IMG/VR virus record: IMGVR_UViG_3300044644_001125
Span: 186,001-250,000 of that record
Reading direction: 5' to 3' (one strand)
DNA: 64,000 bases
Shown here: in pieces, positions 40,432-48,220 of the stretch
How positions within the stretch are numbered: the first letter of the stretch is position 1
Layout of the letters: the number at the start of each line of letters is the position of its first letter
Program-made: the position numbers and the translations under genes
The notes under the pieces: model-generated
The model's database searches: none
Seen by the model: only the letters and a program-made list of their open reading frames with translations
What the model was told of the DNA's origin: nothing

Positions 40432-41595
40432 TTAATCCAACCGTTTACATTTCCAGCCGCCTCGATGGGTTTCTCTAACGCCATTGGAAACTTTTTGCAT
40501 ACCTCGGTATGATAAATTATTATCTTTACAGAATTGACGCATATCACCAACTTTGAAAACTTCACCTTGTGGGTTAATGACATCCCAGTAAACTGGTGTT
40601 CGTTCAACTCGATAATTGATACAGGTCCAACCATGATAATGGCGTTGAGAACCAGATGCCACTTTACACATAGCAGAATAACTAAGGTCATGTTCTACAC
40701 AAAACTTTTTAAAATCATCTGGACAATGGACATTGCCATCTGGGTCAGTGGCCTCCCATTTACACATAGTCGTCAGTCGTTCCGTTTCTAAATGCTTACA
40801 CTTCCAACCACGATGTGTATCTTGTCTGCCATTTGATACGTCTTTCATACACCCTGGATTCAATCCATTTTCTCTACAAAAACGTTCAAGATTTTTAATT
40901 TGAAATACAACACCTAACGGATTTGTAAGTTCCCAATGTTGATCGTGAGGATGATCCATCGTGTTTTTATCCAGCTTCACTTTGGTATTTTTGCGAATCA
41001 CTTCTTCACGAACCTCTTGTGGCGTGCTCAAACACACGCAAGTCCATCCTTTGTGATTCGTTATTTTTCCTTTATCAACCGCATTCATACATGATCGATT
41101 TAACCCGTTGTCCCTGCAATATTTTTCAAGATTGTTAATCTCAATAACTTCGCCGGTTGGAGATGTCAATCTCCAGCGTTTAGTTGCTCGAATCTTCGTA
41201 ACCGTGTTGTTTTTCAACCTAGTTTGATACCCTTTCTTCGCACTCTTACTGGTAGTAACAAATTTCACAGTACCACCATTGTCAACACAATGTTTATTCA
41301 ATGAAAGTGGTTCTTTTCGATGTTTCTTGATGATATCCTGTTCGTACCAATAAACCGCATCAACGTCAGTAGATTCAAATATAATCTCATATTCAAATGC
41401 ACCTTTCCCGTATTCATCGATTAATGCTTCGACATAAGTACTACTAGTAAAGTAGTAAATCCAAAAATCATCTTTTGGTAGTCGTTTTCGATCGATATTT
41501 AATTTACGGTATCCGTAATAGAACTGACCTGTTGGTTTGCATACAAGTTTATACACGTATGCTGGCACACCCGTGCCGTTTTGATAAATACTCAT
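40432..41595 (-). CDS. free-standing GIY-YIG/Seg-like homing endonuclease with repeated C-terminal DNA-binding modules
   Basis: YVYKL....G.FYYGYR...YFTSS; four W.L..P.G....NL..FC..NGL...M..V..G...H.GW.C units; TATAAATA at 41653-41660 (minus). Confidence 0.75.
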   Translation of the reverse strand: MSIYQNGTGVPAYVYKLVCKPTGQFYYGYRKLNIDRKRLPKDDFWIYYFTSSTYVEALIDEYGKGAFEYEIIFESTDVDAVYWYEQDIIKKHRKEPLSLNKHCVDNGGTVKFVTTSKSAKKGYQTRLKNNTVTKIRATKRWRLTSPTGEVIEINNLEKYCRDNGLNRSCMNAVDKGKITNHKGWTCVCLSTPQEVREEVIRKNTKVKLDKNTMDHPHDQHWELTNPLGVVFQIKNLERFCRENGLNPGCMKDVSNGRQDTHRGWKCKHLETERLTTMCKWEATDPDGNVHCPDDFKKFCVEHDLSYSAMCKVASGSQRHYHGWTCINYRVERTPVYWDVINPQGEVFKVGDMRQFCKDNNLSYRGMQKVSNGVRETHRGGWKCKRLD

Positions 41596-42236: not shown

Positions 42237-43793
42237 TTAATCATCTTCACCATAATATCGCAATACTTCTGCAACGACCTTTGATCTTTCAATATCAGAA
42301 TGATTAAAATGAACAATCGAGATTGCTGAATCTGCTTCCTTTGCACTTTCATACAATTCCATGAAATTCCTCAATCCATTACGATCACCCCTATCACTCT
42401 GCGCTAAATCACCCGTAATTATCAATTTACTCGACGAAGCTATTCGAGTAAGAAGCATTTTCATTTGATTGGGTGTGGTTAACTGCGCCTCATCTGCAAT
42501 AATAACTGAATTCTGTAAGTTTCGCCCTCTAAGGCACCCTATTAATGCAAATTCAATAACTTTTTCATTGACATAATGATTTACCGTATCTGGACTCCAA
42601 TTATCTTCAAGTATATCAACGATGCTCAATACATACGGTTCGATTTTATCACGTACTCCGCCCGGTAAGGCACCAATAATTTCATCAGTAGCGTATAGCG
42701 GTCTAGCAATCACCAGTTTATCATATTTTCCCTTTTTTAACTGATCAATTCCATACTGCACTGCTAATAAAGTGTTGTGATTCACAATAAACTCATCAGT
42801 AACATACAGATGATCCTCACTATCAATCAAGATACACTGACATTCTTCCATCTCAGCTTCTACAACTGAGAGCACTGGCATTAACTCTAAAGGACTCTCA
42901 ACGATACTAAACCGAATATGAACACCAGTGTCTTTGATACAAGCAGAACCACCGATAGAACGAACTAAGTAGACAACCGAGTCTTGTAACAAGGCACCAG
43001 CAGTAAAGACTAGGTTACCAGAATCGACAGCATGGATGCTGGTATCGAGTAGACCTTGTAGTAATTTAACTTTTTGTGAACGAGAAGCGTTGAGATATTC
43101 CGCTGGGATAGCTTTATCGTCTTTTAAAAGCATAGTACCTAATTGGAAAGGGTCGATTGGTAGTTCTACATCGTCCATGATTTCGTGTTTAGGTAGGCGA
43201 ATATAAGGCATAATAGAGCCATGATAACGCAGTTTAAGTAGTTCTAGCGTATTGATGACTGCAGGTTTATTATCAATGAATACTTCCCATAGGTGTTCTG
43301 CGCAGGCTAGAGTAGAACGACCATCGTGCAAGGTGATTGAATACGTTTGTTTACTACCTTGTGGGAATAAGCCGACGACATTAGCGGTATTACCATCAGG
43401 AGTAGTGACTTTATCACCTACTGCGATATCACCCATAGTAGTCCACCCGCCAGGGATTTTGATTTTGGAGGTTAGCGGTTGAGCTTTACCAGTACCAGCT
43501 GGACCGATAGCAAAAACAATTTGTTTTTTAGGATTGTTAAGTTCCATTAAGTATTGTTCTTGGCTAAGGTTTTTGGGGTGAATTTGAACCCGTTTACGTT
43601 TAGCAGCCAACCGTTGATCGATTGACATTTGTTGTGGGTCTGGTTGTTGCTGGTGGTTTTGTTGATGGGACTGCTGGTGATTTCTACTGGAGTTTTTACT
43701 ACGGGCTTTTTTGCTTTGGGGTGGGGTGTTTGGTTCATGCGTTTCGTTGAAATACTCGCGTGAATCCGTGTGTCTTGATCTTTTTCTCGTCAT
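42237..43793 (-). CDS. phoH: PhoH-family ATPase with intein
   Basis: GPAGTGK|...|TLLA, IARP, GALPG, RGR, IIADEAQ, RI, ITGD..QSD, DIERS. Confidence 0.92.
   Translation of the reverse strand: MTRKRSRHTDSREYFNETHEPNTPPQSKKARSKNSSRNHQQSHQQNHQQQPDPQQMSIDQRLAAKRKRVQIHPKNLSQEQYLMELNNPKKQIVFAIGPAGTGKAQPLTSKIKIPGGWTTMGDIAVGDKVTTPDGNTANVVGLFPQGSKQTYSITLHDGRSTLACAEHLWEVFIDNKPAVINTLELLKLRYHGSIMPYIRLPKHEIMDDVELPIDPFQLGTMLLKDDKAIPAEYLNASRSQKVKLLQGLLDTSIHAVDSGNLVFTAGALLQDSVVYLVRSIGGSACIKDTGVHIRFSIVESPLELMPVLSVVEAEMEECQCILIDSEDHLYVTDEFIVNHNTLLAVQYGIDQLKKGKYDKLVIARPLYATDEIIGALPGGVRDKIEPYVLSIVDILEDNWSPDTVNHYVNEKVIEFALIGCLRGRNLQNSVIIADEAQLTTPNQMKMLLTRIASSSKLIITGDLAQSDRGDRNGLRNFMELYESAKEADSAISIVHFNHSDIERSKVVAEVLRYYGEDD
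42774..43484 (-). mobile_element. intein in PhoH Walker A (237 aa, Ala1, class-3-like)
   Basis: GK|AQPLTSKIKIPGGW...ACAEHLW...CQCILID...VNHN|T; decayed LAGLIDADG-like LLQGLLDTS. Confidence 0.9.
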
Positions 43794-43965
43794 GCTTTGA
43801 AGTCCTTTTTGGTTGAAGTTTGAACTGCGTTAAGTACTGCACTGCTTGTATTTAGTTATTGGATAGGTTATGATATGCCACGGCTCGCACCTATCGGTGC
43901 TCGCGACAATACACAATAATACAGGCTCGCGAGAATACAATGCAATACAATACAGTAATATATGC

Positions 43966-43993
43966 TTGACATCAGTTATCTTTTAGTTATAAT
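43966..43993 (+). promoter_or_regulatory. sigma70-type early promoter, Lcl cluster 2
   Basis: TTGACA-TCAGTTATCTTTTAGT-TATAAT; near-identical copy at 50432. Confidence 0.85.
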
Positions 43994-44021
43994 ACGCAAA
44001 ACTCAACTAATAGGAACCAAC

Positions 44022-44288
44022 ATGAAATACTATCAACATACTGTTTACATACGCGAAGATTCCACTGGGTTAACTGCGCATCGTAACGCAGGCGATTCAG
44101 AATGGGGTGAAATAGAAAGCTGTTCTGAAAAACTAGATGTGGTTTGGGTTTGTTGTAATGAGTTTGGTAAGGAAATACATAAAATATACGACAATCGTAT
44201 AGATGCTGAGTCTTATGCCTGTTCTTGCAATCGCTTTAGAGGCGATGATTCTGAAAACGTAATTGTAGAATGTTTGGAAATCCTATGA
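44022..44288 (+). CDS. hypothetical protein
   Basis: AGGA SD, ATG 44022. Confidence 0.65.
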   Translation: MKYYQHTVYIREDSTGLTAHRNAGDSEWGEIESCSEKLDVVWVCCNEFGKEIHKIYDNRIDAESYACSCNRFRGDDSENVIVECLEIL

Positions 44289-44578
44289 ACTTTGAAATAG
44301 CACCAAAAGAAACCGAGATCCAAGCCAACTGGGATGATGCCCGATTGTATTGTTTTGCTCTTAATATTGATGGTAAGACTGGATGGAGATTACCAACCAA
44401 AGACGAATTGAATGAAATATATCAATCAAAAAATGATTTTGAGGAGGAATGGTATTGGTCCTCTACTGAGTGCAATGACGATAACGCCTGGGGTCAGTGT
44501 TTCTACGGCGGAGCCCATTCCGACGGCGATAAGAACTACGGCGACATCTACGTTAGAGCAGTTAGAGATATAACATGA
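44285..44578 (+). CDS. DUF1566/Lcl paralog 6 with DGR-type variable region
   Basis: WSSTE-CNDDN-AW-GQC-F-YG-G...K...YVRAVR; NNC/NNT codons. Confidence 0.88.
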   Translation: MNFEIAPKETEIQANWDDARLYCFALNIDGKTGWRLPTKDELNEIYQSKNDFEEEWYWSSTECNDDNAWGQCFYGGAHSDGDKNYGDIYVRAVRDIT

Positions 44579-44865
44579 AATTCGAAATAGCACCAAAATC
44601 GACTGAAATCCGAACCAACTGGGATAATGCAAGATTGTATAGTTTCTTTCTTACAATCGATGGAAAATCAGGATGGAGGTTACCTACTAAAAACGAATTT
44701 AGTGAAATTTGGAAATCCGATAACGATTTCGATGGTTGGTATTGGTCTTCGACCGAAATTGATACCACACGCGCCTGGGTAAAAAGTTTCTTGTCAAACA
44801 GTTTTCACAAGGCAAATAAACTTGATGATAAGATTATAACTAGGTTAGTTCGGGATTTACTATGA
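44575..44865 (+). CDS. DUF1566/Lcl paralog 7
   Basis: GWRLPT, YWSSTE, AW..SF. Confidence 0.85.
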   Translation: MKFEIAPKSTEIRTNWDNARLYSFFLTIDGKSGWRLPTKNEFSEIWKSDNDFDGWYWSSTEIDTTRAWVKSFLSNSFHKANKLDDKIITRLVRDLL

Positions 44866-45158
44866 AATTCGAAATAGCACCAAAAGAAACCGAGATACTA
44901 GCCAACTGGGATGATGCCAGATTGTATTGTTTTGCTCTTCGTATAGATGGTAAAACAGGATGGCGGTTGCCAACCAAGAAAGAGTTGAATATAATGGTTG
45001 ATTTTCTCAATGGTAATGATTATTATTGGACTAGCGAAGAATGGGGTGATGTAAGCATTTGGGTTCAAAAAGGCTTCGCGTATCGAGGAATTCACCACCA
45101 GTTTCATGCCCATCGTGAAAGTAAAAATAAGGTTAGAGCCGTGAGATCTAAAAGATAA
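44862..45158 (+). CDS. DUF1566/Lcl paralog 8
   Basis: GWRLPT, YWTS, VRAVR. Confidence 0.82.
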   Translation: MKFEIAPKETEILANWDDARLYCFALRIDGKTGWRLPTKKELNIMVDFLNGNDYYWTSEEWGDVSIWVQKGFAYRGIHHQFHAHRESKNKVRAVRSKR

Positions 45159-45379
45159 TGAAATCAAAAATTGAAATAGCACCTACATCAGAAAATTGGT
45201 TATCATACGATGAGGCATTGCTATATTGCTTTGCCTTGAACATCGATGGTAAGATTGGATGGAGAATGCCAACTGACAAAGAATTTCAATACCATTATAA
45301 CATACGAGGATGGTACTTAAATGAGCAATGTCCAGAACCATTACCCGTAACACCAGTGCGAGATCTAAAAGATGATTGA
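45158..45379 (+). CDS. DUF1566/Lcl paralog 9 (internally shortened)
   Basis: YCFALNIDGKIGWRMPT, TPVRDLKD. Confidence 0.75.
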   Translation: MKSKIEIAPTSENWLSYDEALLYCFALNIDGKIGWRMPTDKEFQYHYNIRGWYLNEQCPEPLPVTPVRDLKDD

Positions 45380-45602
45380 AATAGCACCTGAAGTATATTG
45401 GAAAAAGTTAAACTATTACGAGGCAATCATGTACTGCTTTAGTCTGAATATTGATGGTAAAATAGGTTGGAGATTACCTAATAGTGTTGAATACGAACTT
45501 ACTGAAAAAACTGGATGGGTAGTTGAAGACTTGCACACTTTTCCCAATACTTTTAAGTTACGTGTTCAGTTTTTAACAACCCCAGTGCGAGATATAACAT
45601 GA
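45372..45602 (+). CDS. DUF1566/Lcl paralog 10 (shortened)
   Basis: YCFSLNIDGKIGWRLP, TPVRDI. Confidence 0.75.
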   Translation: MIEIAPEVYWKKLNYYEAIMYCFSLNIDGKIGWRLPNSVEYELTEKTGWVVEDLHTFPNTFKLRVQFLTTPVRDIT

Positions 45603-45862
45603 ACTTTGAGTTTGCAAACGAGAAATATTGGAAAGATTTGACATTCGATGAAGCTAAGATGTATTGCTTCTCTCTTACGATTAATGGTAAGACTGGTTGG
45701 AGATTACCGACTAGTGCAGAACATGCCTTAATTGGTGTGACTCTGTGGGAACAATTTAATCAACTGAGAAGTTCATGCTATCTTTTTTGGGATAGTGAGA
45801 GTGAAAGTAATACCACTGAAGTTTCGAATACCATACCAGTGCGAGATATAATCGATGATTGA
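45599..45862 (+). CDS. DUF1566/Lcl paralog 11
   Basis: YCFSL.INGKTGWRLPT, IPVRDI. Confidence 0.75.
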   Translation: MNFEFANEKYWKDLTFDEAKMYCFSLTINGKTGWRLPTSAEHALIGVTLWEQFNQLRSSCYLFWDSESESNTTEVSNTIPVRDIIDD

Positions 45863-46106
45863 AGTAGGAAAACCACCAGAAAACCGAATGTCGTATGTAG
45901 ATGCTGTGTTGTATTGTTTTTGTTTAGGTGATGGTTGGAGACTGCCAACCCTTGACGAATACAAAGCCATTGAACATGTTATGTGGTACCAAAATGATGA
46001 TTTACAAGATAGTCCCTGTGAATTTCACGTAATACCAGTTAGAGATATTGAACCTACTATGATTAATAGAATACTTTGTCTGATTCACCCAAGGTTTAAA
46101 AGATGA
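45855..46106 (+). CDS. DUF1566/Lcl paralog 12 (shortened)
   Basis: YCFCLGDGWRLPT, IPVRDI. Confidence 0.72.
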   Translation: MIEVGKPPENRMSYVDAVLYCFCLGDGWRLPTLDEYKAIEHVMWYQNDDLQDSPCEFHVIPVRDIEPTMINRILCLIHPRFKR

Positions 46107-46396
46107 TTGAAATAGCACCTAAAGAATATTGGAAAACTGACTTGAATTGGTACGAAGCCAAGATGTATTGTTTTTGTCTTGATATAGATGGTAAAACCGG
46201 TTGGCATTTGCCTGATATGAATTATTTCCACACAAACAAAGTCACACGAGCTGTCAATGATTGGTACTGGACTTCCGAGGACCTTGGATCGGATGCAATG
46301 CAAGTGCGTCCATACGGAATGCACTTTATCGAATGGGACAAGAATGATGCTGGACCTGCTGTTACTATGCCGGTAAGAGATCTAAAAGATAATTGA
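46103..46396 (+). CDS. DUF1566/Lcl paralog 13
   Basis: YCFCLDIDGKTGWHLP, WYWTS, MPVRDLKD. Confidence 0.78.
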   Translation: MIEIAPKEYWKTDLNWYEAKMYCFCLDIDGKTGWHLPDMNYFHTNKVTRAVNDWYWTSEDLGSDAMQVRPYGMHFIEWDKNDAGPAVTMPVRDLKDN

Positions 46397-46405
46397 AAAT
46401 AAAGG

Positions 46406-46517
46406 TTGACATTACTGCTCAATAGAGTTACAATTAACTATATTATGAAATTACCCAAAAGAAGTTAACGAGAAACCTTGAAAAAAGGTTGACAGTCCCC
46501 ATAATCTAAGTTATACT
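46406..46517 (+). promoter_or_regulatory. two tandem sigma70 promoters facing a non-coding region
   Basis: TTGACA-17-TACAAT (46406-46434) and TTGACA-17-TATACT (46489-46517). Confidence 0.75.
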
Positions 46518-46649
46518 TAATCATATTCTACTCAAAAGCAGTTTACCGAGACCATCTCAAATCCATACCGACACCAAGTCTATTACTCAATTATCTTTTA
46601 GAGACCATCTCAATACTAATTCAATTATCTTTTAGGCACCCGCCAAACT

Positions 46650-47092
46650 TGCTCGTCGAATTACTAGATAGAACATAGAAAGACGAGAGAATTGCTAAGA
46701 AAGCCGCGCACAGGCGACCATTACGTGCCCTTAAACCCTAGTCTACTTGTCACATAGGGGATGGAAGTTCCGAATTTAGCAACGGAGATGTAACTCACTA
46801 CCCCACCAGATGAGTTATGGGATATGCCTTCATACAACCCATTTGAGTTACAGCAAAAAGATATAACAAAGGCTAAAGATGGGTTGAGAAAACCCGCGTT
46901 TGTTGGATGAGGTAGCAGTTGTTCAGCAAGCCACCGTCAGATTAATAAGACTGAGCTCGAGGTACCGGCTGACCGCCTCTGTAATGCTCTACTGCTGCTG
47001 TGATGCGATACTTGTACGCAGAACCTTTCATAGTTGTTCCATGAAAGTGCTTTGAATTAACCCGAGTTTTTCGGGTTAAGATGTTCCGCTCC
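46650..47092 (+). ncRNA. candidate large structured non-coding RNA
   Basis: ORF-free, GC-richer; stems CCCTA/TAGGG, TCCG/CGGA, GTAACTCA/TGAGTTAC, GGGTT/AACCC, GTAGCAGT/ACTGCTGC, TCAG/CTGA, GAGG/CCTC, TGCG/CGCA, CTTTCAT/ATGAAAG, TTAACCCGA/TCGGGTTAA. Confidence 0.6.
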
Positions 47093-47159
47093 ACATACCG
47101 CAGTATTAAAAGCCTCTATTATTAAAGCTATTAATGATTCTATTATAAATCTATTATTG

Positions 47160-47540
47160 TAGGAGCACCTAAAAGATAATAGATTCTACTTTATCTTCCC
47201 TTATATCCTACCTGCTTAAGCCACGCGCACATACATTTTGAACCTAAAAGATAATTGCCTTATAGCTGTTTCCATTCGCGCACATACATTTTAGATGCAT
47301 TCGAACCCATACATTTTAGCTTTTTACCAGATGCACACATACATTATAAACTCCATACGAACACATACATTTTAAACTAAAAGATAATTCAATTAATAAC
47401 TCAACTATAAGATCATTAATACAAAACATCATAACTAAAAGATAATAGATCAAATATAAACATCATCTATAAGACAATCATCTTTTAGTAATAGACATCA
47501 TCTATAAGTCTATAATAGTTTAATCATCTTTTAGTATTAT
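47160..47540. repeat. AT-rich iteron-like repeat region (candidate origin)
   Basis: 5x CATACATT, 4x CTAAAAGATAAT then 2x inverted ATCATCTTTTAG, 2x ACATCATCTATAAG. Confidence 0.65.
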
Positions 47541-47686
47541 TCTTTTAAATGGACAGTTACGTCCAAAATCTGGTGGGTTCAATTATCTATTTCATTTCTA
47601 TATGTGCGAGCGCGAATAGCGCGAGCTATCAGAGATACATTCAACAACCAATCCAAAATCGCCTAAATACGACAATAGGAGAATTT

Positions 47687-48220
47687 ATGGCAACAGACAT
47701 TAAAGACGTAATACAGAATATTGAACAGATTTATGGTTCTAATAACAGTCTCGCTTTGCTAAAAGATTTCGAACGGGTTATAGATGAATTAGACACATAT
47801 GTCTATGATAACTGGATTGATGGTGAATTAGTTGTTGGACCAAATGAAAGTCGTTACTTTGTTGAATGTACTTTTATGTGGCCTAAAAAGCAAATGCCAG
47901 AACCCATTGGTGGATTAAGACTAATGGAGTATGGGTGTAAAGTTGAGTTTGCTAGTTCCCATTTTTCAAGAGTTCGAAAGATTAAGAAAGTTGATGACAT
48001 CAGACCAGGCACGCGTAAAGGTAAGATTGACCGCGAAGAAGTTTGGCTAGTTAAAATTGGCATGCCAAAGAAACTCATGACTGATATCACACGTGGTTAT
48101 ACTAATTTGGATAAAAACAAGTTAGATGATATTGCTACGATGAATCGTGGAGTGAATGCGCATGTTGACCCAGCTGAAACACAAGCAATGGAGGCTGAGA
48201 ATGAACTTCCACCACTCTAA
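47687..48220 (+). CDS. conserved phage hypothetical protein
   Basis: Late promoter, AGGAG SD, ATG 47687. Confidence 0.75.
   Translation: MATDIKDVIQNIEQIYGSNNSLALLKDFERVIDELDTYVYDNWIDGELVVGPNESRYFVECTFMWPKKQMPEPIGGLRLMEYGCKVEFASSHFSRVRKIKKVDDIRPGTRKGKIDREEVWLVKIGMPKKLMTDITRGYTNLDKNKLDDIATMNRGVNAHVDPAETQAMEAENELPPL

What the first reader, a model, noticed from the sequence alone, without database searches (positions are those of the whole stretch)
46406..47092. Promoter-driven ~440-nt structured non-coding element
Seen: two consensus sigma70 promoters fire into 1.1 kb with no ORF of 60 aa or more. 46650-47092 is GC-richer with at least ten stems. These include a long-range GTAGCAGT/ACTGCTGC helix enclosing two hairpins, a perfect 9-bp TTAACCCGA/TCGGGTTAA hairpin, and GTAACTCA able to pair with either of two TGAGTTA(C) partners (switch-like). 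Inference: a large phage ncRNA, such as a replication primer/R-loop RNA for the adjacent repeats or a scaffold RNA. It does not contain the inferred DGR template.
Basis: partly seen in the sequence, partly recalled or inferred. Interest (0 to 1): 0.7.

Follow-up and report, generated by a model that had tools for sequence, protein, structure and literature searches.

The report
Four-copy large structured phage RNA cassette
The flagged stretch is a real gene for a roughly 0.5-kb folded RNA in a 327-kb T4-like freshwater phage; its first third is the known Rfam motif Polynucleobacter-1, it sits in a 1.15-kb non-coding cassette repeated four times in the genome, and its function is unknown.

Summary
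Window 46703-46853 matches Rfam RF01718 (Polynucleobacter-1 RNA) at 68.3 bits against a cut-off of 37. It is therefore partly a known motif of unknown function.

New points:
- The conserved RNA runs from about 46640 to 47100. That is about three times the Rfam model.
- Covariation in 50 phage sequences supports about 11 helices, including two pseudoknots.
- The whole 1.15-kb non-coding cassette (about 46400-47565) occurs four times in the genome at 78-83% identity. It holds tandem sigma70-type promoters, a repeat leader, the RNA and iteron-like arrays.
- Related T4-like jumbo phages carry one copy at the locus syntenic with copy D. A Burkholderiales mobile-element class shares only the 5' domain.
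- In one freshwater sample, RNA-library contigs cover the leader and RNA but not the arrays.

The "switch" pairing is not supported, and folding energy alone is unremarkable (z -0.11).

The best reading is a discrete, promoter-driven structured-RNA gene acting independently of downstream genes. A transcription-primed replication origin remains a serious rival. I rate it a new variant of a known kind.

The parts
46400..47565 (+). Whole non-coding cassette, copy A of four in the genome.
   Evidence: Self-blastn and MAFFT. The other copies lie at genome 164987-166234 (+), 34306-35470 (-) and 310576-311796 (+), at 78-83% identity over about 1.15-1.25 kb. The same cassette occurs in 7 IMG/VR contigs.
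46406..46434 (+). Promoter P1, sigma70-type (TTGACA-17-TACAAT).
   Evidence: 11 of 12 matches. Conserved in copies A, B and C, degenerate in D.
46489..46517 (+). Promoter P2, sigma70-type (TTGACA-17-TATACT). The start site is expected near 46524.
   Evidence: 11 of 12 matches. The -35 element is invariant and the -10 is kept in all four copies.
46530..46635 (+). Leader built of 53-nt repeat units. Each unit ends in the 12-mer ATTATCTTTTAG (46590-46601 and 46624-46635). The unit number varies between copies and relatives.
   Evidence: The spacing of GAGACCATCTC is 53 nt, and L013 and L014 have extra units.
46652..46687 (+). 5' hairpin specific to the jumbo-type class (CTCGTC/GACGAG).
   Evidence: Copies B and D carry CTCACC/GGTGAG, which is two compensatory pairs. 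The same changes are seen in RNA-library contigs.
46703..46853 (+). 5' domain, equal to Rfam RF01718 Polynucleobacter-1 (helices P1-P5, invariant GGGAUGGAA and CACUA).
   Evidence: cmscan: 68.3 bits, gathering score 37, E 2e-12, full model 1-141. P1, P2 and P5 covary.
46881..46895 (+). Hairpin P6 (GGGTT/AACCC).
   Evidence: 4 pairs with changes on both sides, 85% paired (helix 7).
46900..46929 (+). Hairpin P7 (11 bp). Its loop carries the 5' strand of P8.
   Evidence: 11 of 11 pairs with compensatory changes, 90-92% paired.
46912..46998 (+). Long-range pseudoknot helix P8: 46912-46918 pairs with 46992-46998.
   Evidence: 7 of 7 pairs compensatory, 94-95% paired.
46936..46989 (+). Pseudoknotted core. 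P9 is 46936-46940/46969-46973, P10 is 46953-46956/46986-46989, and P11 is 46959-46963/46975-46979. The 46930-46985 stretch is identical in all four copies.
   Evidence: P9, P10 and P11 are 98-100% paired, with 3, 3 and 2 compensatory pairs respectively. Covariance model R1 scores 87.6 bits here.
47004..47079 (+). 3' hairpins. P12 is 47004-47007/47017-47020. P13 is 47025-47031/47041-47047. P14 is 47057-47065/47071-47079.
   Evidence: P13 has a completely different sequence in each of the four copies yet folds as a hairpin in each. P14 is conserved, and its T-class equivalent covaries.
47107..47548 (.). AT-rich repeat arrays. There are four copies of CTAAAAGATAAT (47169, 47244, 47377, 47435), five of ATACATTTT-type (47231-47365) and two of ATCTATAAG-type (47465, 47500). 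AT content is up to 0.82.
   Evidence: The ATACATTTT-type and ATCTATAAG-type repeats occur essentially only in the four cassettes. No RNA-library contig lies on the equivalent stretch of copy D.
47549..47563 (+). Conserved right-end motif ATGGAYAGYTACGTC. Homology between the four copies stops here.

Best explanation
WHAT IT IS (shown)
The flagged stretch is the core of a 1.15-kb non-coding cassette. The cassette occurs four times in a 327-kb T4-like jumbo phage from lake water. Each cassette carries tandem sigma70-type promoters and a repeat leader. It also carries a gene for a roughly 0.45-0.5-kb RNA with at least 11 covariation-supported helices and two pseudoknots. The first 150 nt of that RNA are the Rfam family Polynucleobacter-1 (RF01718). 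The rest is an undescribed extension shared with single-copy relatives in other T4-like jumbo phages.

HOW IT MOST LIKELY WORKS (inferred)
1. The host RNA polymerase fires from P2 (and P1) early in infection.
2. The transcript stops or is trimmed before the downstream repeat arrays.
3. It folds into a compact tertiary structure. A receptor-like CCUAAAC/GGGAUGG element and GAAA-type loops are present.
4. It acts as a free-standing RNA or RNA-protein particle, not as the leader of a neighbouring gene.
5. Four copies with rRNA-like tandem promoters raise the dose.
6. Oppositely oriented sets of the genome-wide 12-mer CTAAAAGATAAT flank the RNA gene. They tie its expression to the factor that acts at the phage's other sigma70-type promoters.

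HOW LIKELY
- About 0.9 that this is a discrete structured-RNA gene of an extended RF01718 family.
- About 0.45 that it acts in trans with dosage amplification as described.
- The biochemical activity itself is unknown.
For: - Family match: 68.3 bits against a cut-off of 37. Four genomic matches score 68-80 bits.
- Whole-cassette repetition.
- Homology extends well beyond the Rfam model in 90 viral and 27 metagenomic sequences.
- Covariation over the whole RNA: 87.3% of cells paired against 73.0% in shuffles, 48 pairs changed on both sides, 0 of 500 shuffles as high. Slid controls give 26-49%.
- Covariation in the 3' domain: 95.3% paired and 26 of 32 pairs compensatory.
- P13 is a different hairpin in every copy.
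- Promoters are conserved.
- Independence from downstream genes. Copy C points into the 3' end of the convergent large-terminase gene, and the downstream genes of A, B and D are unrelated (virion proteins, RNA ligase, an 801-aa protein).
- RNA libraries. In three rRNA-depleted libraries of one freshwater sample, contigs at least 95% identical to copy D cover the leader and RNA at depth 5.7-15. Flanking genes have depth 2-4.6. Nothing lies on the 730-nt array region.
- The T-class RNA ends in a covarying 7-bp stem followed by a T-run before the next gene.
Against: - No direct mapping of 5' and 3' ends. The RNA evidence is assembled contigs from one sample, which show presence and not absence. 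DNA carry-over cannot be excluded. One contig also extends upstream of P2.
- A pure RNA-gene reading does not explain why 450 bp of downstream repeat arrays are conserved in all four copies, including copy C.
- No terminator-like site was found after the RNA in this phage.
- No partner protein or target is identified.
- Single-sequence folding energy is unremarkable.
Confidence: 0.45

Rival explanations
1. Replication-origin module. The tandem promoters make a structured primer or activator RNA. Its 3' end hands over to DNA synthesis at the adjacent AT-rich iteron arrays. This would resemble ColE1 RNA II, the T7 primary origin (two promoters followed by an AT-rich stretch) or T4 oriF/oriG R-loops. 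The four cassettes would then be four origins of a 327-kb genome.
For: - Anatomy: two strong promoters, then a roughly 0.5-kb RNA, then 450 bp at up to 82% AT. Two of the repeat types there occur essentially only in the cassettes.
- The arrays are conserved even in copy C, which has no downstream gene.
- There are four dispersed copies, each close to a strand-switch and local minimum of cumulative GC skew.
- RNA-library coverage stops before the arrays.
- An RNase H gene sits directly upstream of copy D, within a recombination and replication gene neighbourhood (gp46-like SbcC, PD-(D/E)XK nuclease).
- Phages and integrative elements both need origins, so this function could be common to all carriers.
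Against: - T-class relatives have the same RNA followed by an intrinsic terminator and the next gene. They have no iteron or AT-rich array.
- GC skew follows gene orientation, so the minima are not independent evidence.
- No initiator gene is linked to the cassettes.
- Repeat spacing (25, 30, 26 nt) shows no simple helical phasing.
- No G-rich R-loop-promoting stretch is seen.
- The comparison with T4, T7 and ColE1 origins rests on my own knowledge, not on a test done here.
Confidence: 0.25
2. Cis-acting leader. The RNA would be a 5' UTR element that controls transcription into the downstream genes by attenuation or processive antitermination, as with HK022 put RNA. This follows the original labelling of Polynucleobacter-1 as a candidate cis-regulatory motif.
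For: - PMC2864571 lists the motif as likely cis-regulatory.
- In the T and B classes the RNA is followed by a terminator-like hairpin and then a co-oriented gene.
- Copy D and the T-class loci are both followed by a large protein with a similar MK..E.. N-terminus.
Against: - Copy C has no co-oriented downstream gene.
- 450-600 nt of repeat arrays separate the RNA from the next start codon.
- The downstream genes of the four copies are unrelated.
- No RNA-library contig bridges the RNA and the downstream gene.
Confidence: 0.12
3. Guide-type or bridge-type RNA for a small nuclease or recombinase. The neighbouring single-domain enzymes would use the RNA for target choice. These enzymes are a 144-aa GIY-YIG-only protein in the T class and a 188-aa catalytic-only tyrosine recombinase in the B class. 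The matched variable direct repeats R1 and R2 would be the specificity segments.
For: - The neighbours lack recognisable DNA-binding domains.
- R1 and R2 flank the 3' hairpin. They occur in 16 sequence variants among 105 sequences and always change together.
Against: - This phage has four RNA copies but no tyrosine recombinase and no DUF6641. Its only GIY-YIG protein is a full-length homing endonuclease about 5 kb away on the other strand.
- No complementary or additional copy of R1/R2 was found in up to 14 kb around each locus.
- Adjacency within the T class may be plain synteny.
- The R1/R2 pattern is not clear in the jumbo-type class.
Confidence: 0.05
4. Selfish or neutral repeated DNA, such as a miniature mobile element or recombination scar, without an RNA function.
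For: Four dispersed copies with sharp homology boundaries.
Against: - No terminal inverted repeats or target duplications at the boundaries.
- There is extensive compensatory base-pair change, which only selection on an RNA fold explains.
- Promoters are conserved.
- The element is conserved at a syntenic locus in distant phages.
Confidence: 0.03

Closest known systems
Polynucleobacter-1 RNA motif (Rfam RF01718; Weinberg et al. 2010, PMC2864571)
   Same: Window 46703-46853 matches the full 141-position model at 68.3 bits. It has the same helices and invariant GGGAUGGAA and CACUA. The habitat is also the same, freshwater (runs; the paper's table).
   Different: - The Rfam model is only the 5' third of the RNA found here.
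- The 3' two thirds, with two pseudoknots, are not in Rfam.
- My model of that part finds nothing in 39 loci of the Burkholderiales class.
- Here the RNA has its own tandem promoters, sits in a four-copy cassette, and is not tied to a downstream gene. The motif was proposed as cis-regulatory.
GOLLD and ROOL large phage-associated non-coding RNAs (own knowledge of the literature)
   Same: They are large, elaborately folded RNAs of unknown function, carried by phages and prophages and found by comparative genomics.
   Different: No sequence or structure match: no Rfam hit to these families at gathering or E<=1 thresholds. This RNA is somewhat smaller and is not next to tRNA genes here.
Transcription-primed origins: ColE1 RNA II, the T7 primary origin, T4 oriF/oriG (own knowledge)
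   Same: Promoter(s), then a transcript, then an AT-rich region. T7 has two tandem promoters before an AT-rich stretch. RNA II is a roughly 550-nt structured primer processed by RNase H. T4 has several dispersed origins.
   Different: - No homology was tested or found.
- Relatives keep the RNA without any AT-rich array.
- No mapped RNA-DNA transition.
- T4 origins need no conserved structured RNA.
HK022 put RNA and other promoter-proximal antitermination RNAs (own knowledge)
   Same: A structured RNA just downstream of strong early promoters and upstream of a terminator (T class).
   Different: put is about 70 nt with two stem-loops. Here the RNA is about 0.5 kb and pseudoknotted, and one copy has no downstream operon.
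HEARO/omega RNAs and IS110 bridge RNAs (own knowledge; reviews listed)
   Same: A large structured RNA next to a small nuclease or recombinase gene in mobile elements. Short variable segments change in a coordinated way.
   Different: No IscB, TnpB or IS110 protein is present. This phage lacks the neighbouring enzymes of the other classes. No target complementary to the variable segments was found.

Membership tests
Rfam RF01718 Polynucleobacter-1 RNA | Covariance-model score at or above the curated gathering score (37 bits) over the full model. | tested here: met
   68.3 bits, model positions 1-141 of 141, E 2.3e-12 in the 64-kb window. The four genomic copies score 68.3-80.1 bits.
Rfam RF01718 Polynucleobacter-1 RNA | The model's helices are maintained by compensatory change. 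| tested here: met
   - P1 and P2 are 100% paired with changes on both sides, and P5 is 85% paired.
- The outer helix GTAACTC/GAGTTAC changes in step in copies B, C, D and in L205.
- P3 and P4 are badly aligned by MAFFT between classes, so their tool counts are low.
Rfam RF01718 Polynucleobacter-1 RNA | Occurrence in Burkholderiales or in freshwater and estuary samples. | tested here: met
   The holders of the stretch are lake-water and freshwater metagenomes. The same motif occurs in Polynucleobacter and Burkholderiaceae genomes. It is sporadic there, in 2-3 of 121 genomes searched.
Rfam RF01718 Polynucleobacter-1 RNA | Proposed role as a cis-regulatory element in the 5' UTR of the downstream gene (PMC2864571). 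| tested here: not met
   - Copy C has no co-oriented downstream gene.
- 450-600 nt of arrays intervene before the next start codon.
- The downstream genes differ between copies.
- No RNA-library contig bridges to the downstream gene.
This is a proposed property, not a defining one, so membership stands.
Group I / group II introns and other large ribozymes in Rfam | A match to the family's covariance model. | tested here: not met
   There are no such hits at the gathering threshold in the window, or at E<=1 in 46300-47700. The only other hit is GIR1 at 17.3 bits against a cut-off of 100 (E 0.26), in the repeat arrays on the minus strand, which is a chance match.
GOLLD / ROOL / OLE / HEARO large ncRNAs | A match to the family's covariance model. 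| tested here: not met
   No hit.
Transcription-primed replication origin (ColE1/T7/T4 oriF type) | Promoter(s) directed into an AT-rich unwinding region with repeats. | tested here: met
   P1 and P2. The arrays are at up to 0.82 AT, with repeats specific to the cassettes.
Transcription-primed replication origin (ColE1/T7/T4 oriF type) | An RNA-to-DNA transition or start of replication mapped at the site; replication depends on the element. | not testable with these tools
   This needs infected cells (marker frequency, 2D gels, primer mapping).
Transcription-primed replication origin (ColE1/T7/T4 oriF type) | The feature set is conserved wherever the RNA occurs. | tested here: not met
   The T-class loci have the RNA, a terminator and then the next gene, with no arrays.

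The most novel reading that the evidence does not exclude
The RNA family is a programmable specificity RNA for minimal nucleases and recombinases of mobile elements. These would be the GIY-YIG-only protein in T4-like jumbo phages and the catalytic-only tyrosine recombinase in Burkholderiales elements. The matched variable repeats R1/R2 would serve as guide or handshake segments. The four promoter-driven copies in this phage would be a derived, protein-independent or differently partnered form. An almost equally novel alternative is a conserved RNA-II-like origin primer shared by jumbo phages and integrative elements.
Probability: 0.05. Interest if true: 0.9.

Novelty: new variant of a known kind. 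Interest (0 to 1): 0.6.

Why it matters
Large bacterial or phage RNAs with elaborate, pseudoknotted folds are rare, and they have repeatedly turned out to be ribozymes, guides or particle-forming RNAs.

This work makes several things possible:
- A small orphan Rfam motif, listed since 2010 as a possible 5' UTR element, becomes the front end of a roughly 0.5-kb RNA carried by T4-like jumbo phages of lakes.
- It provides a fold backed by covariation.
- It provides an experimentally convenient form. The RNA sits behind consensus sigma70 promoters, so it should express in ordinary bacteria.
- The four-copy cassette with private repeat arrays gives a concrete and testable candidate for multiple origins, or for a dosage-amplified early RNA, in a jumbo phage.

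If the function stays unknown, the practical gain is a better family model and a corrected annotation.

Tried and rejected
- blastn of 46400-47560 against 50,697 GenBank phage records gave no match.
- The GIR1 ribozyme hit in the arrays is a chance match (17 bits against a cut-off of 100).
- Folding energy as evidence of structure was rejected (z -0.11).
- A small 5' pseudoknot, 46703-46705 with 46713-46715, is not supported as aligned (54% paired).
- RNAalifold on a raw MAFFT alignment was too noisy to use.
- An all-against-all column-pair scan gave many spurious 3-bp 'helices'. Only stems of 4 bp or more with several covarying pairs were kept.
- I searched for a cis partner complementary to the covarying direct repeats R1/R2. 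Within the RNA, only one subclade showed a wobble-rich match near +100. In up to 14 kb of flanks, hits were at chance level.
- A P4 CI-type model, in which the hairpin loop pairs with R1/R2, was rejected because the loops do not change with the repeats.
- Covariance model R1 of the 3' domain found nothing in 39 Burkholderiales-class loci. A single 600-nt family spanning all three classes is therefore not shown.
- tblastn of the T-class neighbour proteins against this genome gave nothing.
- Cumulative GC skew as an origin test is confounded by gene orientation.
- A long-range helix 47000-47011/47083-47094, suggested by folding copies A and C, is broken in copies B and D.
- Literature searches for RNA-associated tyrosine recombinases and for DUF6641 found nothing relevant.
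- A mobile-element reading was rejected because there are no terminal repeats or target duplications.
Full report
**What is there**

The window is bases 186001-250000 of a 327,256-bp IMG/VR virus record with CheckV completeness 92%. The record encodes a T4-type major capsid protein (PF07068, 319.8 bits). It also encodes gp46-like and gp26-like proteins. It is therefore a T4-like jumbo phage. The DNA runs that hold it are lake-water and freshwater metagenomes.

Between the last small upstream gene (ending at 46396) and the next gene (start codon at 47687) no ORF reaches 60 aa.

A scan of the whole window against Rfam 15 gives exactly one hit. It is RF01718, Polynucleobacter-1 RNA, at 46703-46853 on the plus strand. 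The score is 68.3 bits against a gathering score of 37, over the full model. That family comes from the 2010 survey of 104 candidate structured RNAs. The survey lists it for Burkholderiales and freshwater/estuary samples as a probable RNA and probable cis-regulatory element, with no known function (PMC2864571). It is the only paper in the library that names the family.

**The unit is a four-copy cassette**

The genome holds four RF01718 matches of 68-80 bits. Self-comparison shows that the whole non-coding block is repeated, not just the motif. Window positions of about 46400-47565 recur at genome 164987-166234 (+), 34306-35470 (-) and 310576-311796 (+), at 78-83% identity.

The four copies share the following parts in order:
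- Promoter P1 (degenerate in copy D).
- Promoter P2.
- A leader of 53-nt repeat units, each ending in ATTATCTTTTAG.
- A highly conserved core, about 46636-47106, in which 46930-46985 is identical in all copies.
- About 450 bp of AT-rich arrays built from three short repeats.
- A conserved end motif at 47549-47563.

Homology stops sharply at both ends, and there are no terminal inverted repeats or target duplications.

The flanking genes differ between copies:
- Copy A is followed by virion structural proteins.
- Copy B is followed by a T4-type RNA ligase.
- Copy D is followed by an 801-aa protein.
- Copy C runs head-on into the 3' end of the large terminase gene.

Seven IMG/VR contigs carry the same full cassette.

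**The RNA is much larger than the Rfam model**

A degenerate pattern from the motif found 103 stretches in IMG/VR. Profile searches show that in most viral hits the similarity to this cassette runs on for about 270-300 nt, well past the 150-nt Rfam match. In 27 metagenomic sequences it spans about 390 profile positions.

Three classes emerge:
- **Class J** is the jumbo-type cassette described above.
- **Class T** is single-copy in other T4-like jumbo phage contigs, five of five records checked. It always sits after gp47, gp46, two small genes and a 144-aa GIY-YIG-only protein (PF19835). It sits before a low-complexity protein starting MK(I)..E... The gp51/gp26 baseplate-hub genes lie on the opposite strand.
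- **Class B** is the original Burkholderiales/freshwater class. It lies between a divergent DUF6641 gene and, about 1 kb downstream, a 188-aa catalytic-domain-only tyrosine recombinase. It is present in only 2-3 of 121 genomes sampled from that bacterial family, so it is carried on mobile elements.

Copy D of this phage is the orthologue of the class T locus. Its order is a gp46-like gene, three small paralogues, a PD-(D/E)XK nuclease, RNase H, the cassette, the 801-aa protein, and then a gp26-like gene on the minus strand. Copies A, B and C are therefore lineage-specific duplications.

A covariance model of the J/T 3' domain scores 87.6 bits on the window but finds nothing in 39 class B loci. 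Class B thus shares the 5' domain. By eye it also shares the 3' hairpin flanked by repeats and a terminal hairpin. Its middle part is different or too diverged to detect.

**Structure**

On energy alone the region is unremarkable. The minimum free energy is -117.1 kcal/mol against -116.5 +/- 5.8 for shuffles, giving z = -0.11. Counting stems by eye would therefore not have been evidence of structure. Covariation is.

On 50 J and T sequences, a structure of 66 pairs gave these results:
- 87.3% of cells are paired, against 73.0% after shuffling.
- 48 pairs are changed on both sides, against 33.3.
- The covariation score is 0.414, against 0.166.
- No shuffle out of 500 reaches any of these values.
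- Partners slid by 1-3 columns give only 26-49% pairing.

On a cleaner alignment of the 3' domain (38 sequences), 95.3% of cells pair and 26 of 32 pairs show compensatory change.

The supported helices are:

| Helix | Window positions |
|---|---|
| P1 | 46708-46711 / 46725-46728 |
| P2 | 46736-46740 / 46755-46759 |
| P5 | 46817-46821 / 46838-46842 |
| P6 | 46881-46885 / 46891-46895 |
| P7 | 46900-46910 / 46919-46929 |
| P8 | 46912-46918 / 46992-46998 |
| P9 | 46936-46940 / 46969-46973 |
| P10 | 46953-46956 / 46986-46989 |
| P11 | 46959-46963 / 46975-46979 |

The 5' strand of P8 lies in the loop of P7, and the 3' strand of P9 lies in the loop of P11. That gives two pseudoknots.

Further support comes from the four copies themselves. 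The class J 5' hairpin 46652-46657/46682-46687 carries two compensatory pairs. P13 (47025-47047) has four unrelated sequences in the four copies, all of which fold as hairpins. The outer helix of the Rfam model (46790-46796/46845-46851) changes in step in copies B, C, D and in L205.

Two further points are my own reading and were not tested. The invariant CCUAAAC...GGGAUGG arrangement resembles a tetraloop receptor, and GAAA-type loops are present.

In class T the RNA ends in a 7-bp stem (6 covarying pairs) followed by a T-run, just before the next gene.

**Transcription**

P1 and P2 each match 11 of 12 consensus positions with 17-nt spacers and are conserved between copies.

Only assembled contigs of public RNA libraries were available. 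In three rRNA-depleted metatranscriptome libraries from one freshwater sample, contigs at least 95% identical to copy D behave as follows:
- They cover its leader and RNA (locus L001 1215-1813, up to about window-equivalent 47015) at word depth 5.7-15.
- The flanking protein genes have depth 2-4.6.
- The 730 nt of arrays have no contig at all.

The first laying on the window shows the same picture. It also shows class T-like contigs at depth 10-57 in a marine metatranscriptome.

This is suggestive and not proof. Contigs show presence and not absence. DNA carry-over is possible. One contig reaches upstream of P2. Contig ends fall where the four copies converge or diverge. The 3' end is therefore uncertain, somewhere between about 47015 and 47110.

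**What it most likely does**

The following are firmly supported:
- This is a gene for a large structured RNA of an extended RF01718 family.
- It has its own promoters.
- It is amplified to four copies.
- It is not tied to a particular downstream gene.

My preferred reading (about 0.45) is a discrete early transcript that acts in trans as an RNA or RNA-protein particle. Copy number and rRNA-like tandem promoters would supply the dose.

The 12-mer CTAAAAGATAAT occurs 139 times in the genome where 0.2 are expected. It often overlaps or abuts sigma70-type promoters and often forms inverted pairs. It flanks the RNA core in opposite orientations, with two sites upstream and four downstream in copy A. 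That would couple the cassette to whatever factor acts at those promoters.

It explains the conserved, apparently untranscribed, cassette-specific arrays. It also fits the four dispersed copies, the neighbouring RNase H at copy D, and the fact that phages and integrative elements all need origins. It does not explain class T, where the RNA is followed by a terminator and a gene with no arrays. In addition, the GC-skew minima near the cassettes coincide with strand switches.

A cis-leader role (about 0.12) fits classes T and B better than this phage.

A guide-like role for the adjacent minimal nuclease or recombinase (about 0.05) is the most novel reading not excluded. It is prompted by an unexplained feature. 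In classes T and B, two direct repeats flank the 3' hairpin, for example ACTC-GGATAATG and ATCT-GGATAATA, or ACTC-AGCGAAAG and ATCT-AGCGAAAA. They occur in 16 variants among 105 sequences and always change together. No complementary partner was found in the RNA or its surroundings. This phage has no tyrosine recombinase, no DUF6641 and no 144-aa GIY-YIG homologue. No such partner is therefore obligatory.

**Verdict**

The finding is real, but part of it is already known. The 5' third of the RNA is a catalogued Rfam motif of unknown function. Three things are new: the full size and pseudoknotted fold of the RNA, its home in T4-like jumbo phages, and the four-copy promoter-RNA-array cassette. 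I rate it a new variant of a known kind, with interest 0.6.

Noticed in passing
Genome-wide; in the window e.g. 46382-46393, 46590-46601 (reverse orientation), 47169, 47244, 47377, 47435: The 12-mer CTAAAAGATAAT occurs 139 times in the 327-kb genome, where 0.2 are expected. Many copies lie in the spacer or -10 region of promoters (TTGACA-N9-ATTATCTTTTAGAAT) or directly upstream of TTGACA. Many form inverted pairs about 16 nt apart. It looks like the operator or promoter element of a phage-wide regulator. More than a dozen copies encode the C-terminus ..RDLKDN* of a small paralogous gene family.
   Followed up: partly
Window 43962-46396 (+); also genome 308588-309473 and 36254-37197 (-): There are tandem arrays of small paralogous genes of about 75-108 aa. 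A typical start is MKFEIAPKETE..NWDDARLYCFALNIDGKTGWRLPT. They lie directly upstream of cassettes A, C and D. One member tested has no Pfam or PHROG match.
   Followed up: partly
Related loci, e.g. L071, L048, L140, L226, at about +255 to +320 from the TAAACC of the motif: Two direct repeats of 12 nt or more flank the 3' hairpin of the RNA in classes T and B. There are 16 variants among 105 sequences, and the two repeats always change together. No complementary partner was found. This is unexplained.
   Followed up: partly
Whole genome G000: No reverse transcriptase (PF00078) was found at E<=0.001 anywhere in the record. A DGR inferred elsewhere in this window therefore lacks its enzyme.
   Followed up: partly
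Window 40432-41595 (-): A 387-aa free-standing homing endonuclease. It has a weak SegE-type GIY-YIG domain and a NUMOD-like domain, and its best PHROG hit is phrog_2081, annotated HNH endonuclease. It is the only PF19835 match in the genome.
   Followed up: no
Window 42237-43793 (-): A 518-aa PhoH-like protein. Its PhoH domain is confined to residues 341-514. The N-terminal 340 residues give P-loop (terminase, DnaC and primase-like) PHROG hits and a weak Hint-domain hit. It may be a fusion or an intein remnant.
   Followed up: no
L140, L222, L144, L162, L138 (bacterial and metagenomic class B loci): The Burkholderiales-class RNA lies in sporadic mobile elements. It sits between a divergent DUF6641 gene and a 188-204-aa tyrosine recombinase that consists of the catalytic domain only. 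An AAA ATPase lies nearby in L222.
   Followed up: partly
L036 7554-8060, L048 6692-8683, genome 311998-314403: The gene after the RNA in class T and after copy D encodes Ala/Gly-rich proteins of 168-801 aa with no family match. Their N-termini (MKI.EL..E..) remind me of T4 capsid-targeting sequences of internal head proteins. That is a recollection and was not tested.
   Followed up: no
Genome 310104-310523 (directly upstream of cassette D): An RNase H gene (PF00075, 158 bits) and a PD-(D/E)XK nuclease gene sit immediately before the ancestral copy of the cassette.
   Followed up: no
Window 47314-47382 (-): There is a weak GIR1 ribozyme 'match' of 17.3 bits against a cut-off of 100, with most of the model skipped. 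It lies in the repeat arrays and is a chance hit.
   Followed up: yes
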